Assembly: GCA_033442325.1 (NCBI GenBank)
Contig: JAWQFM010000005.1
Coordinates: 1,071,058-1,135,057 of the forward strand
Direction: 5' to 3'
Source: Salpingoeca rosetta
Lineage: Eukaryota; Protista; Choanoflagellata
Length of the DNA: 64,000 nt
Part shown: one piece after another, positions 47,800-64,000 of the stretch
How the letters are laid out: the number at the start of each line of letters is the position of its first letter
Position numbering within the stretch: the stretch's first letter is position 1
The notes under the pieces: generated by a model
Told to the model about the DNA's origin: nothing
The model's input: only the letters and a program-made list of their open reading frames with translations
Databases searched by the model: none
Position numbers and translations under genes: made by a program

Positions 47800-57917
<10,118 letters not shown>

Positions 57918-58706
57918 AGTGGAACACGTTTCCGTCCTTGTGTTGGCGACAATGCGTGTGTGCTCTTGGCATGCACGCTACAAAGAGACCGTGATTGTAA
58001 CATGCTCCACACATACATACGCCCAACTACCCTTCTTCCCAACGTGTTTGTTGACTTTCCGTACTCCGGTCTCCCGTGGCGGCGCACACAGTCTTGCCGT
58101 GCTTACGTTGCGTTTACATTAGAACTTGCTTTGTTGACCTTCCCATTCCTCCCATCTTGTATCCAATTGCGCGTTGTAGCGCGTTGTGTTGTCGGCTTGG
58201 CACACTTTTCCAGCCAACCATCTCCTTATTTGCCCCATCCCCCATGTTATCTTGCTGCACTGGGCTGCTTTGCATCTGTGTGCTGCTTCTTCCCTTGTCT
58301 TGGTGCTGTTGCGGTATCACCCTCGCTCACAGACGCAAGGGAACAAGCAACAAATACACCCTACGCGCGCTTACGCTTGCTTCATGCTGTTGCTGTATTG
58401 GTGGTGATGTGCTGTTCATCGTTGCAACGAACTGAATACGCACAGGGGTTGGTGGGCATGCGTGTCATGGTGTAACCACACAAGAATTGACGTGAATGCA
58501 AGCACAAACAAAAGCACGCACGCGCGCATATCAGAAGCACACAGGACAGACAAGTTACATATGCAGCCATTATGGATGGTCCTTGGGTATGTACAGTCGG
58601 TGGAGTTGGACAAGGCACGCACCTCATGAATCAAGGAGCGCAAAGAATACAGAATGAGCGCTGTTGACAAGCAAAAACGAAAAGGCACGTCTGAAAAATC
58701 AAATGG

Positions 58707-58771
<65 letters not shown>

Positions 58772-58779
58772 GGTGTCAG

Positions 58780-58945
58780 CTAGACCTTGCCAAACTCAAA
58801 CCAGTTCCCGGCATCTCTCGTTTTCCTGAGTAGAAAGAGCAAACACAATCAGCGTCAGAGCAGCGACTGGCAAGGCAGGCATAGATGTTGGAGAAGACGC
58901 ATTTGCGTGTATGTGGGTGTGTGTTCGTACACGTGTGCGTGTGTG

Positions 58946-58985
<40 letters not shown>

Positions 58986-59094
58986 TGTGTGTGCTTGTGT
59001 GTGAGGGTGATGTGCACCACTCACGATCGAGATCTGCTGGGGCCGTGTGGATGAGAGGAGCTCGAGCGACGGCGGTCGCCTACCAACACCGAAT

Positions 59095-59142
<48 letters not shown>

Positions 59143-62100
59143 ATATGCAGTGTGCAGTGAGTTGCTGTTCACCGTCGAGGACGAGAGAAGTTCGCAAGTA
59201 CGAGAGACGTTCGCGAGCACACGATACAAGGGCAGGTGCCGGACCTTTGTCTGAGGGCATCAAGGTGGAGTGGGACGAGTTTGAGGAGCGCAGAAGCGAT
59301 GATGGTCCAATGGACTGGCGGCGTCCACTTTCGTCGTTCCTGCACTCACTCAAACACACACACACACACACACACGCACGCACACACACACATACACATA
59401 CAAATACACACACACATGCAGCTTTGGGTCAGAGGATCGTCATGTGAACAGGCCAAGTAAGCAGTTTATCATGACTGGTCTCTTTGTGCAAAAACTGGGA
59501 GACATACCGGTTTCGCTGCTTGGAGTTATGGAGGGAAGGCAGTGATTTGGAAAGGAGCGTTTGACAGGGAGATGTGGATGAGCAAATGGCGACGGGGTGC
59601 GCAGAGCAGACTCACAGGGCAGAGATGTTTACACATACGCAAACAAACAAACAAACAAACAAACAAACAAACAAACAAACAAACAAACAAACAAACAAAC
59701 AAACAAACAAACAAACAAACAAACAAACAAACAAACAACAAACAAACAAACAAACAAACAAACAAACAAACAAACAAACAACAAACAAACAAACAAACAC
59801 ACGTAGACATATGCAGTGACAATGTCCGTGCAAACCTGTGTGGACGAAGGATCCAGCACGGACGCTGCGGTAGACGAGAGCGAGCGTGTGTAGAGCCCAC
59901 GTGGAGAACTGGACGCCCGCAATTCGTCCGCAGCGGAGGTTGACATGTGCAGTCCCCGCTTGTGCTTAATCTGGCAGAACACGATGCGTGGCACCAACCG
60001 AAGCGAAGTGAGGTGTGCATGACATTCCCACAATTCGCGCAGAAACACACACACACGCACACACACACGCGCGCGCGCGCACGCAGACACCAGTAAAGCA
60101 CGCGCCAGCTCAACTCAAACACGAGACACTCAGTACAACCACCACCACATCGACAAGACAGCGCTGTCCCCACCTGCACGCCGCGTCGGGAGGCGCCGCT
60201 GATTGAAGAGCGCCACGTGCGCGAGAACGGCACTTCGCCCTCCAGCGCTGCACCAGACGCAGATGATGACAGCTTGCTAGCGCCGCTACCACCACCGCCG
60301 CCGGCACTGACACCGCTGCCACGCGAGGAGGATGGTGTCTTCTTGCGGCGAGAGCGCGATGGCGTGTGTTCGTCCGCTTCGCCGCCATCACCACGGCCGG
60401 CGTCGCTGCTGCGAGACGCGTGCGTGTGTCTTCGTCGGTCCCCGCGATCACGGCTGCGGTGTGACGGTGACTTGCGCGTGCGCTCTCCACTGCGATGGCG
60501 CTGCCTGCGTCCGTCACCATCCGTCGGCTTTGCGCCCGTGTACGCGCGGCTGCGGCCTTTCCCCATCGGGAAGGTGGCGTCCAGGGCCGGTGCGCCGGAA
60601 AACGACGCCGACAGCGCCGAGGACGATGGCGTCATCACGGACGTGTGTGTCACATCGTCCATGCCAACTTCGGGTGCAGTGGACGGACGATCCGCGCCAA
60701 TGAACACGTCCAGCGCTGTCCTTGCGCGTGTTCGGAAGCTGCTGTTTGACCCAATGCTCTGGTTAAGGGCGCTTCCACTCGTCGCCATATGCTGCTGGTG
60801 GTGGCCATTGGACATGGCCGGGAGCTCCCCTTGCGGCTGCTGTTGTGGCTGTGGTTGTGATTCTTGTGGTTGTGGTTGTTGAAACACCTCCTGTACGTCT
60901 TGCGCGTGCAGCTCCTCTTGTTGTTGCAGCTGCGCTTGTTCCTGTAGGAATTCGTTTACCGTCTGCACATCGCTCGAGTCCCGACTGTGCGTTTGATGGT
61001 GCGCGCGACCAGCGTCACTGCGGTGCATCGTGTCAGCGCGCGCGCGTGTTTTTGCTGCCCCCGCCACATCCTCCATGCTGTGTTTGTACAGCTCCGGGTC
61101 CGAGGTTGAGATGTCGCCGCTGTCTGCGATGGAGGAGCGCTTTGCAATCATCACCGGCGACGCGTTGGCCGTGGACGACCCGCTCTCGTCCCCGCCGCTG
61201 CAGACGGACGGACGGACGGACGGACGGAGGAGGAGGAGGAGGAAAGTGAAGGGAAGGAGGCGAGGGAGTCGTAGTTGGGGATGGAGAGGTGGAAAGAAAA
61301 GCAAAAAGAAGGAAAGGGGGGGGGAGATGTTGCGAACAGGAAACGTGAACGAGTTAAGGAGTGAGTGAGTGAGTGAGTGAGGGTACAAATGAAGGAAGCA
61401 AGAACACAAGACAAGGCAGACAGTTATAGACATTGCAGCGAAGGCACTCCATCGTCAGCATGCGACAAAATGTACTTGTGGAGATCAGGGGAGCGCGTCG
61501 ATGGGGCTGGATCTGGTGTGGTTGAACCGCCACTCTTGCCCTGCAAACACAGCCAGCGCAGTGAGTGCAGTGCATACAGACATTGTGGAAACAACGCACG
61601 TCACGTGCGCCTCTCAAATAGAAAGAAGCAAGCTGCGCACGTGCAAGCACAACCAAACAAAGCAAGCAAGGCACAAACAAACAAACAGAACAACAAAACA
61701 AACAAACAAACAAACAAACAAAAACAAACAAACAAACAAACAGAACAGAACAGAACAGAACAGAACAGCAAAACAAACGCACAGGCCACCTTCTTTTTGA
61801 AGAATCGAAAGAGCTTCTTCTTGCTTCGGGCCTGTTCCAGTTCATCCGTCAACGCCTCGCGCTCCTTTGTCCAGTTGTGCACCTGCTGTCGCAACTCTTC
61901 CTCCTTGTCCTTCAGCTGCGTGGTGCTCTGCAGTGACTTCACAAGCAGGTCTTGGTTTTGCTTCAGCAAGCTGTTAAGTTTCTCCACGTATGACGCGTTC
62001 TCTGCCTCCAAACTGGCCTTGATCTTCGTCAGCAGCTTCACTTTGTCCTGCTGCTTCAACTCCGCCGCGCGATGCTTGTGTGCTTCCCGCTCTGTGCGTG

Positions 62101-64000
62101 TGTGTGTGCGTGTGTGTTGGCGGGGGGGGGGAGGTCGGGTGAGTGTGTACGTGGGTGAATGAATGGATGTCCAATTTCGAATGCGCTTGCGTGAGCGTTG
62201 GGATTTGACGTTCGCCTCACAAGCAAGGTCACACGTGACCGGAACGGCAGCTGTCCATCACGTACCGAGTGTGCGCGCCTGTCGTCGCAACTTGTCGCAT
62301 TCGCTCACAAGCATCTCATTCTGCAGCAAACAGCACCCAACAAGAGTACATTTGCGTGAGCGTGGATGATCAGAAAGGGCATCAAGCGAAGCATGGTAGT
62401 CTACACACACACACACAGACATACACACACGCACACACACACGCACGCACACACACCGCACACTACAGGTCGCCTAATCAACAGACCCTGCTCACCATGT
62501 TGCTGATGTTGTCTAGTTTCTCGCGAAGACCAACAACCTCGTTCCTGTCATTGAGGAAACGCGTGGGCACAAGTGATGTGACATGTGATGGCACGCGTGT
62601 CGTGCGAGTGTGAGTCATGACGCGTTCATTCCACAAATTCCCATCATGAACAAAGAAGACGCGAGCGCGCCAAACACACATAAACACATACATGCACACG
62701 CACACACACATACACACACAGACACACGCGCGCACACAGAGGCACACACGTGTCTGATGATGTTGCGCGTGCTGCCTCGAGGGACTGCTTGAGCATGCTG
62801 TTCTCGCTCTTCAGTGCACTCAGTTCTGCTTGCAACAGCGACACGGCCGACACAGGTGACGACTGCTCGCTTGCGCCATCCTGCAGTGGTGGTTGAGATC
62901 GGGAGGTGGAGATGTTGCGTGCAGTGCGATGAAGACAGGTGGTGAGCGTGCATGTAGTGGCGAGGAACATCAACACGGCGCAACGCAACAGCAACGTGAG
63001 ATGAACCGATTTGTGCGGATTATTCAGCACACGCACACGAAGATTGAACAACAACAAACAACAACAACAACAGCAACAACAAACAACAAGGACAAGTGGC
63101 GCGTACGAATGCGAATTGGGAGGAAGATTTGGTGGCGCGGTCTGTCTGCGAGACGAGGGGACTGCCGGTTGCGCTTGAGAGCTTGCTGGATGACGGGGCA
63201 CGACGCGTGGCGAGCGGCGAGCTGTCTCGTCGGCTGGCAGCAGAGCGCAACAGCTCAATGTGCCGCTTCGCAAGCGCCATGTCCTGCACCATCGTGGCGA
63301 GGGGCGGTGGTGGGCACACGAGAGCATGTGGTATCAGCCGTGGTGGTTCACAACGACGACGACGACGACGAGGAGGAGGAGGAGGAGGAGGAGGAGGAGG
63401 AGGAGGAGGACGAGGAGGAGGACGAGAAAGAGGAGGTGAAGAAGAACGAGGAGGAGGAGGAGGAGGAGGAGGAGGAGGAGGAGGAGGAGGAGGAGGAGGA
63501 GGAGGAGGAGGAGGAGGAGGAGGAGAAAGAAGAAGAGAAGGAATGTACGCGCACACACACGCAGACACACGCAGTAGGGCGTGCGCACCTGCTTGAGCTG
63601 TTCGTTGTGTTCTGTTGCCTCCTTGAGCCGCGCCTCCAGCGTCTTGATGCGCCCGTCCTTAAGTCGAACACCGCGCTCAAACACATCCCCTGTCACCACG
63701 TGTTCGCATTGAGGGGGGGGGGGGCGTGGTGGCATGCGCAATGAGCAATGTGCATGCAGGTGAGCGGGATTGCGCGCATATGCGTGTGTATGAAGCACGA
63801 ACGTATGAATGTCTTCTTGTGGGCGGGTGGTGCCTGCGGTTTGCTTCGTCGCAATGCACTGTGCAGTAGTTGTCTCCACCACCACCACTACCACCATTGT
63901 CACCATCGTCATCGTTGTGCGTACCAAGCTTCTTCTCGATGCTGAGCGGGGAGGCAGAGGCCGCGTTCGACTTGAGTGACGCCACCTGCTCCTGCAATGA
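58780..64000 (-). CDS. CCDC88: Girdin/Daple (CCDC88, Hook-related) family protein, 3' part; 5' end lies outside the window
   Basis: Coiled-coil exons end in [40 protein letters not shown]...[10 protein letters not shown]...[11 protein letters not shown] (62091-61790), matching recalled Girdin [39 protein letters not shown]...RRQKEKLEEKI. A disordered tail follows, with exons 61540-61476, 61197-60174, 59970-59836, 59515/59518-59508, 59339-59173 (or 59245), 59079-59025 and 58825-58780, ending [11 protein letters not shown]-stop. Confidence 0.82.
59640..59798. repeat. (AAAC)n tetranucleotide microsatellite, intronic
   Basis: About 39 AAAC units with two single-base slips, in the intron preceding the 8/11-nt microexon of the CCDC88 gene. 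Confidence 0.9.
63354..63525. repeat. (GAC)n/(GAG)n trinucleotide tract, probably intronic
   Basis: Lies between the CCDC88 exon ending ...NEQLKQ|gtgcgc (~63588) and the next exon (~63337 or below). Confidence 0.75.

What the first reader, a model, noticed from the sequence alone, without database searches (positions are those of the whole stretch)
58780..59079. Daple-type C-terminal PDZ-binding motif (NWFEFGKV-stop) revealed only after splicing
Seen: exon 59079-59025 (phase 1 to 2) spliced to 58825-58780 gives ...[21 protein letters not shown]-stop, a frame not shown in the ORF track. Knowledge: Daple/CCDC88C and invertebrate Girdin end in WYEYGCV, which binds PDZ domains of Dishevelled, MPDZ and PARD3. 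The W-aromatic-E-aromatic-G-x-V pattern is retained after roughly 500 aa of unconserved disordered sequence. Inference: the PDZ-docking tail predates animals and cell junctions, and its native PDZ partner is unknown.
Basis: partly seen in the sequence, partly recalled or inferred. Interest (0 to 1): 0.8.

Follow-up and report, generated by a model that had tools for sequence, protein, structure and literature searches.

The report
Choanoflagellate Daple/Girdin homologue's PDZ-type tail
A single-celled relative of animals (Salpingoeca rosetta) has a Daple/Girdin-family gene whose spliced end, already in the public annotation, closely resembles the tail that animal Daple uses to dock onto PDZ proteins, although the known animal docking partners are reported absent from this organism.

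Summary
On the minus strand, exon 59079-59025 (donor GTGAGT) joins exon 58825-58780 (acceptor CTCAG) in frame and reads ...[21 protein letters not shown]-stop. It is not a new gene structure. The window is Salpingoeca rosetta scaffold GL832957.1, and the public 1300-residue model PTSG_01822 (XP_004997802.1) ends in exactly these residues.

The protein belongs to the CCDC88 (Girdin/Daple) family. It has a HOOK_N domain and a long coiled coil. Its best hits are Daple/Girdin at 130-159 bits, against 58-62 bits for Hook3-like proteins.

Animal CCDC88 tails in my hit set read (S/T)VWYEYGCV. The S. rosetta tail keeps Trp at -6, aromatic residues at -5 and -3, Glu at -4, Gly at -2 and Val at 0. A match at a fixed place has a chance of about 5e-10. 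Both tyrosines are Phe and the -1 residue is Lys.

The only other choanoflagellate orthologue I found (Choanoeca perplexa) ends SWDDEETV and keeps only Trp -6 and Val 0.

PDZ binding is untested. No paper I could search mentions this tail.

Verdict: a new member of a known kind, of moderate interest.

The parts
58783..58803 (-). Codons for WFEFGKV, the last seven residues (positions -6 to 0) of PTSG_01822. This is the Daple-like C-terminal motif.
   Evidence: The pattern occurs once in the six-frame translation of the window.
58780..58782 (-). TAG stop codon. It is followed by a (CAA)n run in the 3' UTR.
   Evidence: The public CDS ends at 58780.
58780..58825 (-). Last coding exon (46 nt with stop). 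It encodes (S)[14 protein letters not shown]. The acceptor is ctttctactcag.
58826..59024 (-). Last intron (199 nt, GTGAGT...CAG) with a (CA)n microsatellite. Reading through the donor gives TCG-TGA, so a retained intron would end the protein at ...SRSRS without the motif.
   Evidence: The ORF 59021..59413 ends ...GPSRSRS.
59025..59079 (-). Penultimate exon (55 nt; phase 1 in, 2 out). It encodes [17 protein letters not shown](S).
59245..59339 (-). Exon encoding [31 protein letters not shown](G).
59508..59515 (-). 8-nt micro-exon (CGAAACCG) of the public model. It supplies R-N and part of the next R codon.
   Evidence: This is the only GT-AG solution that reproduces the public protein.
59836..59970 (-). 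Exon encoding [45 protein letters not shown].
60174..61197 (-). Large exon (1024 nt) encoding residues 848-1188, most of the disordered C-terminal region.
   Evidence: (100% identity to P0001 848-1188).
60945..60965 (-). QTVNEFL, a GBA-like motif (residues 925-931). It is the subject of sibling note s1-435989.
   Evidence: The same regular expression finds the GBA motif of Daple (VTLEEFL).
60180..60200 (-). SGASRRG island (residues 1180-1186). It is the best-conserved short stretch between the S. rosetta and Choanoeca perplexa tails and lies about 100 residues from the C-terminus in both.
   Evidence: top-scoring 9-mer pair; 114 and 95 residues from the ends.
61476..61540 (-). Exon encoding [21 protein letters not shown](N).
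61790..62091 (-). Exon encoding the end of the coiled coil and the basic patch [12 protein letters not shown].
62266..64000 (-). Six further coiled-coil exons: 64000-63925, 63689-63589, 63283-63107, 62880-62750, 62544-62496 and 62320-62266. The gene continues beyond the window, with the CDS start at about window coordinate 69873.

Best explanation
The window holds the 3' half of Salpingoeca rosetta PTSG_01822, the choanoflagellate member of the CCDC88 (Girdin/Daple) family. The architecture is HOOK domain, long coiled coil, basic patch, about 475 disordered residues, then a free C-terminus.

Shown: Shown: this end matches the animal CCDC88 end WYEYGCV at W-6, aromatic -5, E-4, aromatic -3, G-2 and V0.

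Inferred: the two ends are homologous, inherited from the common ancestor of choanoflagellates and animals. Inferred: the tail works as an extended C-terminal PDZ ligand. In that reading, Val 0 and the carboxylate sit in the PDZ pocket, Gly -2 allows the register shift seen in the DVL2-Daple crystal structure, and Trp -6 adds an upstream contact. The tail would tether the dimeric HOOK/coiled-coil scaffold to a PDZ scaffold.

Inferred from literature: the partner cannot be Dishevelled, PARD3 or MPDZ/PATJ, because these are reported as animal innovations. It would be one of the many S. rosetta PDZ proteins. With Phe in place of both tyrosines, the tail lacks the tyrosine-phosphorylation switch of Daple. 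On published Y-to-F data it would resemble a PARD3-type ligand more than a DVL-type ligand.
For: - Splice and frame. Identity with the public model. Unique 14-exon GT-AG threading that includes an 8-nt micro-exon.
- The annotation was refined with RNA-seq, and 98% of genes have transcript support (PMC4054682).
- The gene is expressed at 0.8-13 FPKM (columns identified).
- Exon-only word share in 8 runs.
- Family: HOOK_N at E 1.5e-10. All top hits are Daple/Girdin. Bit scores are 130-159 against CCDC88 and 58-62 against Hook3-like. In the tree the choanoflagellate pair sits on the CCDC88 side of a long branch to Hook3-like.
- Tail: 33 of the 47 animal CCDC88 hits listed end in WYEYGCV. Chance of W[FY]E[FY]G.V at a fixed place is about 5e-10, or about 6e-6 over a proteome of 11,629.
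- Mechanism in animals: all eight C-terminal residues of Daple contact the DVL2 PDZ. Gly -2 has a positive phi angle. Only aromatic residues are tolerated at -6.
- E2024 is named the key determinant for PARD3 and mPDZ binding, and Y-to-F does not harm PARD3 binding.
- Dsh is listed as 'No' in S. rosetta. Par and Crumbs complexes are metazoan innovations.
Against: - No binding data exist for this peptide.
- The Choanoeca perplexa orthologue ends SWDDEETV. The aromatic-E-aromatic-G core is therefore not general among choanoflagellates. Only two choanoflagellate sequences could be compared.
- A TARA metagenome relative ends GVGYAV, but its gene call is uncertain.
- Y-to-F at -5 or -3 is reported to abolish Dvl binding and to weaken mPDZ binding. 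At -3 only Met was tolerated in the DVL2 co-IP assay.
- No choanoflagellate HOOK paralogue was available to root the CCDC88/HOOK split.
Confidence: 0.6

Rival explanations
1. The resemblance is convergent or lineage-specific. The S. rosetta end arose independently of the animal WYEYGCV, or it is bound by something other than a PDZ domain. It would then say nothing about the ancestor of animals.
For: - The closest available orthologue (Choanoeca perplexa) ends SWDDEETV. End-to-end similarity of the two choanoflagellate tails is low: BLOSUM score 7, against 24 for S. rosetta versus Daple.
- Short linear motifs turn over quickly.
- The known PDZ partners are absent.
Against: - A six-position match at the very C-terminus of the orthologous protein has a chance of about 5e-10. 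Independent origin would need the same unusual solution, Trp -6 plus Gly -2.
- Trp -6 and Val 0 are also kept in C. perplexa.
- The C-terminal regions are collinear between the two choanoflagellates (SGASRRG island about 100 residues from each end).
Confidence: 0.2
2. The motif-bearing end is a minor or conditional isoform. The last intron is often retained, and the stop codon that overlaps its donor (TCG-TGA) then yields a protein ending ...SRSRS without the motif. Vertebrate Girdin likewise exists with and without its PDZ-binding end.
For: - The stop lies directly at the donor.
- The Girdin / Girdin-L precedent.
- Mytilus isoforms end either ...NSVWR or ...NSVWYEYGCV.
- The junction was not read in RNA here.
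Against: - The public RNA-seq-refined model uses the splice.
- Donor GTGAGT and the acceptor tract are strong.
- A motif of this specificity would not persist if it were rarely translated.
Confidence: 0.12
3. The gene is a HOOK-family adaptor rather than a CCDC88 orthologue, so the comparison with Daple is misplaced.
For: - The only Pfam hit above threshold is HOOK_N.
- PDB matches are Hook1 and Hook3 domains. No CCDC88 chain matched this query in the PDB sequence search.
- UniProt names the protein only as HOOK N-terminal domain-containing.
Against: - Bit scores to Daple/Girdin are 2-3 times those to Hook3-like, over alignments reaching residue 819.
- Pfam HOOK (PF05622), which is precomputed for the Hook3-like hits, is neither precomputed for this protein nor found in my scan at E up to 0.01.
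- The tree puts it with CCDC88.
- It has the long disordered C-terminal region typical of Girdin/Daple.
- Coleman et al. report ccdc88 orthologues in 3 of 5 unicellular holozoans.
- Blast2GO names it 'protein daple'.
Confidence: 0.04

Closest known systems
Daple (CCDC88C) extended C-terminal PDZ-binding motif, ...QTVWYEYGCV-COOH
   Same: - Same protein family and same location, the extreme C-terminus after a long disordered region.
- Same residues at -6 (W), -4 (E), -2 (G) and 0 (V), with aromatic residues at -5 and -3.
- A GBA-like motif lies upstream in both proteins.
   Different: - Phe replaces Tyr at -5 and -3, so there is no tyrosine-phosphorylation switch. Reduced Dvl/mPDZ binding is predicted from published Y-to-F data.
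- Lys replaces Cys at -1.
- The upstream S/T-V is replaced by G-N.
- The organism lacks Dishevelled, and according to the literature also lacks the Par and Crumbs complexes.
- Binding is untested.
Invertebrate Girdin (Drosophila Girdin, C. elegans GRDN-1) and vertebrate Girdin-L, ending EYGCV/EYGCI
   Same: - Single-copy, pre-duplication CCDC88 gene with the PDZ-binding end.
- Isoforms with and without the end exist in some animals.
- Roles at basal bodies and cilia are reported for these proteins, which is relevant to a flagellated cell.
   Different: The invertebrate ends are almost identical to the vertebrate ones. The S. rosetta end differs at three of seven positions.
Choanoeca perplexa CCDC88 orthologue (EukProt EP00045_P018333), ending ...DPSWDDEETV
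   Same: - Closest sequence relative: 28% identity over about 790 residues.
- Same architecture, with a basic patch after the coiled coil and the SGASRRG island.
- Trp at -6 and Val at 0.
   Different: - The core is acidic (D-D-E-E-T) instead of aromatic-E-aromatic-G-K, so it reads as a more conventional class III-like end.
- The protein is shorter (1048 aa).
HOOK1-3 dynein adaptors
   Same: N-terminal HOOK domain and a coiled coil.
   Different: HOOK proteins are about 700 residues long. They carry the Pfam HOOK C-terminal cargo region and have no long disordered tail or PDZ-binding end. Similarity to PTSG_01822 is much lower (58-62 bits).

Membership tests
CCDC88 (Girdin/Daple/Gipie) family | N-terminal HOOK domain | tested here: met
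   Pfam HOOK_N, residues 22-167, E 1.5e-10, 41.4 bits against a cut-off of 23.5. PDB Hook1/Hook3 domains match residues 21-170.
CCDC88 (Girdin/Daple/Gipie) family | Long central coiled coil homologous to that of Girdin/Daple, and closer to CCDC88 than to HOOK1-3 | tested here: met
   All named top hits are Daple or girdin(-like). BLASTP gives 130-159 bits over residues 8-819, against 58-62 bits for Hook3-like. The tree agrees. Caveat: no choanoflagellate HOOK paralogue was in the tree.
CCDC88 (Girdin/Daple/Gipie) family | Long disordered C-terminal region carrying a G-alpha-binding-and-activating motif (hydrophobic-T-hydrophobic-x-[D/E]-F-hydrophobic) | tested here: inconclusive
   There are about 475 low-complexity residues after the coiled coil. 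QTVNEFL fits six of seven consensus positions. Most invertebrate orthologues lack the motif. G-protein binding is untested.
Extended Daple/Girdin-L PDZ-binding motif | Free C-terminal Val (or Ile) at position 0 | tested here: met
   GTC TAG at 58785-58780. The public protein ends in V.
Extended Daple/Girdin-L PDZ-binding motif | Gly at -2, preceded by an aromatic residue at -3 (Tyr-Gly pair that shifts the register) | tested here: inconclusive
   Gly -2 is present, but -3 is Phe rather than Tyr. At -3 only Met was tolerated in the DVL2 co-IP assay. Y2025F weakens Dvl and mPDZ binding but not PARD3 binding.
Extended Daple/Girdin-L PDZ-binding motif | Aromatic residue (Trp) at -6 | tested here: met
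   TGG at 58803-58801. Only aromatic residues are tolerated at this position in Daple.
Extended Daple/Girdin-L PDZ-binding motif | Glu at -4 | tested here: met
   GAG at 58797-58795. E2024 is named as the key determinant for PARD3 and mPDZ binding.
Extended Daple/Girdin-L PDZ-binding motif | Two phosphorylatable tyrosines at -5 and -3 | tested here: not met
   Both are Phe (TTT at 58800-58798 and 58794-58792).
Extended Daple/Girdin-L PDZ-binding motif | Physical binding to a PDZ domain that depends on the last residues | not testable with these tools
   No complex prediction or binding assay was available. It needs peptide-PDZ assays or AlphaFold-multimer.
Extended Daple/Girdin-L PDZ-binding motif | A cognate partner (DVL, PARD3 or MPDZ/PATJ) in the same organism | not tested
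   Literature only. Dsh is 'No' in S. rosetta (PMC4818920). [quoted passage not shown] I did not search the S. rosetta proteome.

The most novel reading that the evidence does not exclude
The extended CCDC88 tail (Trp -6 ... aromatic-Gly ... Val-COOH) is older than all of its known animal receptors. In the choanoflagellate-animal ancestor it would already have tethered a HOOK/coiled-coil scaffold, possibly carrying a G-protein-activating motif, to a PDZ scaffold at the flagellar base or collar. The PDZ domains of Dishevelled, PARD3 and MPDZ would later have evolved to capture this pre-existing ligand, and the two Phe-to-Tyr changes would have added tyrosine-kinase control. S. rosetta would then give an experimental route to the ancestral partner.
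Probability: 0.3. Interest if true: 0.65.

Novelty: new member of a known kind. Interest (0 to 1): 0.45.

Why it matters
Daple and Girdin link Wnt/Dishevelled signalling, polarity complexes, cilia and G-protein signalling in animals through this unusual tail. A 2025 study shows that the tail binds the DVL2 PDZ domain through all eight residues with exceptional affinity.

A near-copy of the tail in an organism reported to lack Dishevelled, Par3 and Patj suggests that the ligand came first and the animal receptors were fitted to it later. S. rosetta can be cultured and, to my knowledge, edited, so the ancestral partner and function are testable. The flagellar basal body, the collar and rosette polarity are obvious places to look.

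The claim is limited by three things. The gene model is already public. The family was already known to occur in unicellular holozoans. Only one of the two sampled choanoflagellates has the full motif.

Tried and rejected
1. Reading the junction in RNA. The look-up of sequencing runs listed three raw RNA-seq runs and eight probable RNA contig sets. Those places lie in an intron. I take the filter hit as no evidence of anything.

2. Finding more unicellular orthologues. Three protein searches were run: the whole protein, the HOOK region, and a two-species profile. They gave only Choanoeca perplexa and one TARA metagenome fragment. No Monosiga, filasterean or ichthyosporean sequence came up. The word-based candidate step and the length window probably explain this, so it is not evidence of absence.

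3. The exhaustive representative search with the disordered exon found only the protein itself and one spurious low-complexity hit.

4. A scan of JGI metagenome contigs with the profile found nothing.

5. I considered a degenerate DNA pattern for the tail in metagenomes and rejected it. Hundreds of chance hits would be expected, and a 46-nt exon offers no way to confirm them.

6. The TARA relative P0053 ends GVGYAV. Its gene call comes from a metagenome scaffold and is cut at the 5' end, so I give its end no weight.

7. Supplement table S1 of Coleman et al. (the holozoan accessions) is not held.

8. My first spliced-threading script failed, most likely because its 15-nt look-ahead after each acceptor could not accommodate the 8-nt micro-exon. 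The block-based version solved it.

Full report
**What is in the sequence**

Read on the minus strand, 59079-59025 is a 55-nt exon. It is preceded by ...ggtgttggtag and followed by GTGAGT. 58825-58780 is a 46-nt exon preceded by ctttctactcag and ending in TAG. Joined, the two exons read [32 protein letters not shown]-stop in one frame.

The pattern W[FY]E[FY]G.V-stop occurs once in the six-frame translation of the 64-kb window and never in 100 shuffles. With the amino-acid make-up of this protein, the chance of the pattern at a fixed place is about 5e-10. That is about 6e-6 over a proteome of 11,629 proteins.

**Whose gene it is**

A library-wide HMMER search with the large upstream exon (60174-61196) returned one true hit. 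It was a 1300-residue protein, 100% identical over residues 848-1188. That protein ends in ...[19 protein letters not shown].

It is Salpingoeca rosetta PTSG_01822 (EGD78846.1, XP_004997802.1, UniProt F2TZ22). It is named only 'hypothetical' or 'HOOK N-terminal domain-containing protein'. Over the 6 kb I compared (58000-64000), the window is identical to scaffold GL832957.1 of GCA_000188695.1. The coding region runs from about window coordinate 69873, beyond the window's end, to 58780.

Residues 529-1300 thread onto the window in exactly one way, as 14 GT-AG exons. So the tail is 'revealed only after splicing' only with respect to a raw ORF track. The public model has it.

**Is the splice real?**

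I could not read RNA reads. 

Indirect support is good:
- The S. rosetta gene set was built with EST/PASA/EVM and then refined with RNA-seq from eight conditions. 98% of genes have transcript support (PMC4054682).
- In my judgement an 8-nt micro-exon is unlikely in a purely ab initio model.
- That paper's tables list the gene at 0.8-13 FPKM. Expression is higher in swimmers and rosette colonies than in attached cells: log2 swim/attached 2.3, P 1e-9 (header).
- Eight runs from two studies hold 0.38-0.43 of the sampled 31-mers of 58500-63990. Exon-only contigs would give 0.35-0.40.
- An alternative acceptor 9 nt downstream would keep the frame and the tail.
- Retention of the last intron would end the protein at ...SRSRS, because TGA overlaps the donor.

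**Family**

Pfam finds HOOK_N at residues 22-167. PDB matches are the Hook1 and Hook3 domains. Every named top hit of the whole protein is Daple or girdin(-like).

BLASTP gives 130-159 bits to Daple/Girdin, with alignments reaching residue 819. Hook3-like proteins give 58-62 bits. In a maximum-likelihood tree of the N-terminal 620 residues, the two choanoflagellate proteins sit on the CCDC88 side of a very long branch to Hook3-like, outside the animal clade. No choanoflagellate HOOK paralogue was available, so the tree cannot root the split by itself.

Coleman et al. reported ccdc88 orthologues in three of five unicellular holozoans (PMC4760084). The 2013 Blast2GO table already labels PTSG_01822 'protein daple'.

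**The tail compared**

Of the 47 animal CCDC88 hits listed (P0004-P0052, leaving out the unnamed Logan rows P0027 and P0050), 33 end in (S/T)VWYEYGCV. Most of the others are isoforms or truncated models. Two wasp proteins end SLWLEYGCA.

S. rosetta has N-W-F-E-F-G-K-V. Compared with the animal end it shows:
- identity at -6 (W), -4 (E), -2 (G) and 0 (V);
- conservative Tyr-to-Phe changes at -5 and -3;
- Lys for Cys at -1.

The 2025 preprint on DVL2 reports that all eight C-terminal residues of Daple lie as a beta-strand in the PDZ cleft. Gly -2 adopts a positive phi angle that shifts the register. Only aromatic residues are tolerated at -6, and at -3 only Met was tolerated in the co-IP assay. 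The S. rosetta tail keeps precisely the unusual features, Trp -6 and Gly -2. This is the strongest argument that the resemblance is functional.

Against a DVL-like partner, Ear et al. report that Y-to-F at either tyrosine abolishes Dvl binding and that Y2025F weakens mPDZ binding. PARD3 PDZ3 binding is unaffected and depends on Glu -4. The two tyrosines are also the sites of the tyrosine-kinase switch in Daple. That switch cannot exist here.

**Conservation outside animals**

Only one other choanoflagellate orthologue was recovered, from Choanoeca perplexa (1048 aa, 28% identity over about 790 residues). It ends ...DPSWDDEETV, so Trp -6 and Val 0 are kept but the core is acidic.

The disordered regions of the two proteins are collinear in places:
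- a basic patch right after the coiled coil ([12 protein letters not shown] against KRKNWFKRIRSK);
- EFL/NEIL motif candidates;
- an SGASRRG island 114 and 95 residues from the ends.

The ends are therefore positionally homologous. Parsimony then favours an ancestral W-aromatic-E-aromatic-G-x-V end that is kept in S. rosetta and animals and has diverged in Choanoeca. With two species this is an inference, not a result.

**Partners**

Schenkelaars et al. list Dsh as absent from S. rosetta and as a metazoan innovation. The Par complex and the Crumbs complex (with Patj) are likewise considered metazoan innovations. Earlier notes of this scan mention several very large multi-PDZ scaffolds in this genome. 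These are untested leads.

**Novelty**

No paper in the searchable library names PTSG_01822. The only paper holding both 'Girdin' and 'choanoflagellate' is unrelated. The only paper combining ccdc88 with holozoans is Coleman et al., which does not mention PDZ. The literature speaks of conservation 'from invertebrates to vertebrates' or 'deeply conserved throughout evolution'.

I therefore rate this a new member of a known kind. It is a public but unremarked gene end that extends the CCDC88 PDZ-binding tail to a non-animal lacking the known receptors.

Interest is moderate (0.45). A specialist would find it a useful and testable lead rather than a surprise, and the key functional claim is untested.

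Noticed in passing
window 59508-59515 (minus strand): An 8-nt micro-exon (CGAAACCG) is needed to reproduce the public protein (…SSTQ-RN-RNDES…). It has a CAG acceptor and a GTATGT donor.
   Followed up: partly
window 60945-60965 (minus strand); P0003 residues about 850-860 and 903-910: A GBA-like motif, QTVNEFL, lies about 110 residues after the basic patch. Choanoeca perplexa has LNEILQE and SALEFLL at a similar distance. This is the subject of sibling note s1-435989. G-protein binding is untested.
   Followed up: partly
window 60180-60200 (minus strand); P0003 947-953: SGASRRG is the best-conserved island in the otherwise divergent disordered tails of the two choanoflagellate proteins. It lies about 100 residues from each C-terminus. 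It could be a kinase site or a docking motif.
   Followed up: no
window 61790-61825 (minus strand): A basic-hydrophobic patch, [12 protein letters not shown], follows the coiled coil directly. Choanoeca has KRKNWFKRIRSK at the same place. From memory, it resembles the basic lipid-binding stretch of vertebrate Girdin; I did not check this.
   Followed up: no
window 59021-59025 (minus strand): The donor of the last intron overlaps a stop codon (TC|G TGA). An intron-retaining mRNA would therefore encode a protein 14 residues shorter and without the motif. This could be an on/off isoform switch like Girdin versus Girdin-L.
   Followed up: no
window about 47800-57917 (plus strand); L002 21957-31094: [quoted passage not shown] Its coding region ends 863 bp from the Daple-like stop. 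See sibling note s1-436312.
   Followed up: partly
P0023, P0025, P0029 versus P0024, P0026 (Mytilus girdin-like isoforms): The mussel isoforms end either ...NSVWR or ...NSVWYEYGCV. In molluscs, alternative splicing right after the Trp codon apparently switches the PDZ-binding end on and off.
   Followed up: no
window 58707-58779 and the introns of the gene (e.g. 58950-59010, 59085-59140, 59350-59400): A long (CAA)n run starts a few bases after the stop codon. Several introns of the gene that I read carry (CA)n/(GT)n or (GTTT)n microsatellites.
   Followed up: no
They lie in the intron between exons 62091-61790 and 61540-61476, in a stretch that is translated as CLFV-type repeats. I worked beside them.
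   Followed up: no
whole window: The window contains 100 N (an assembly gap) somewhere outside the region studied.
   Followed up: no
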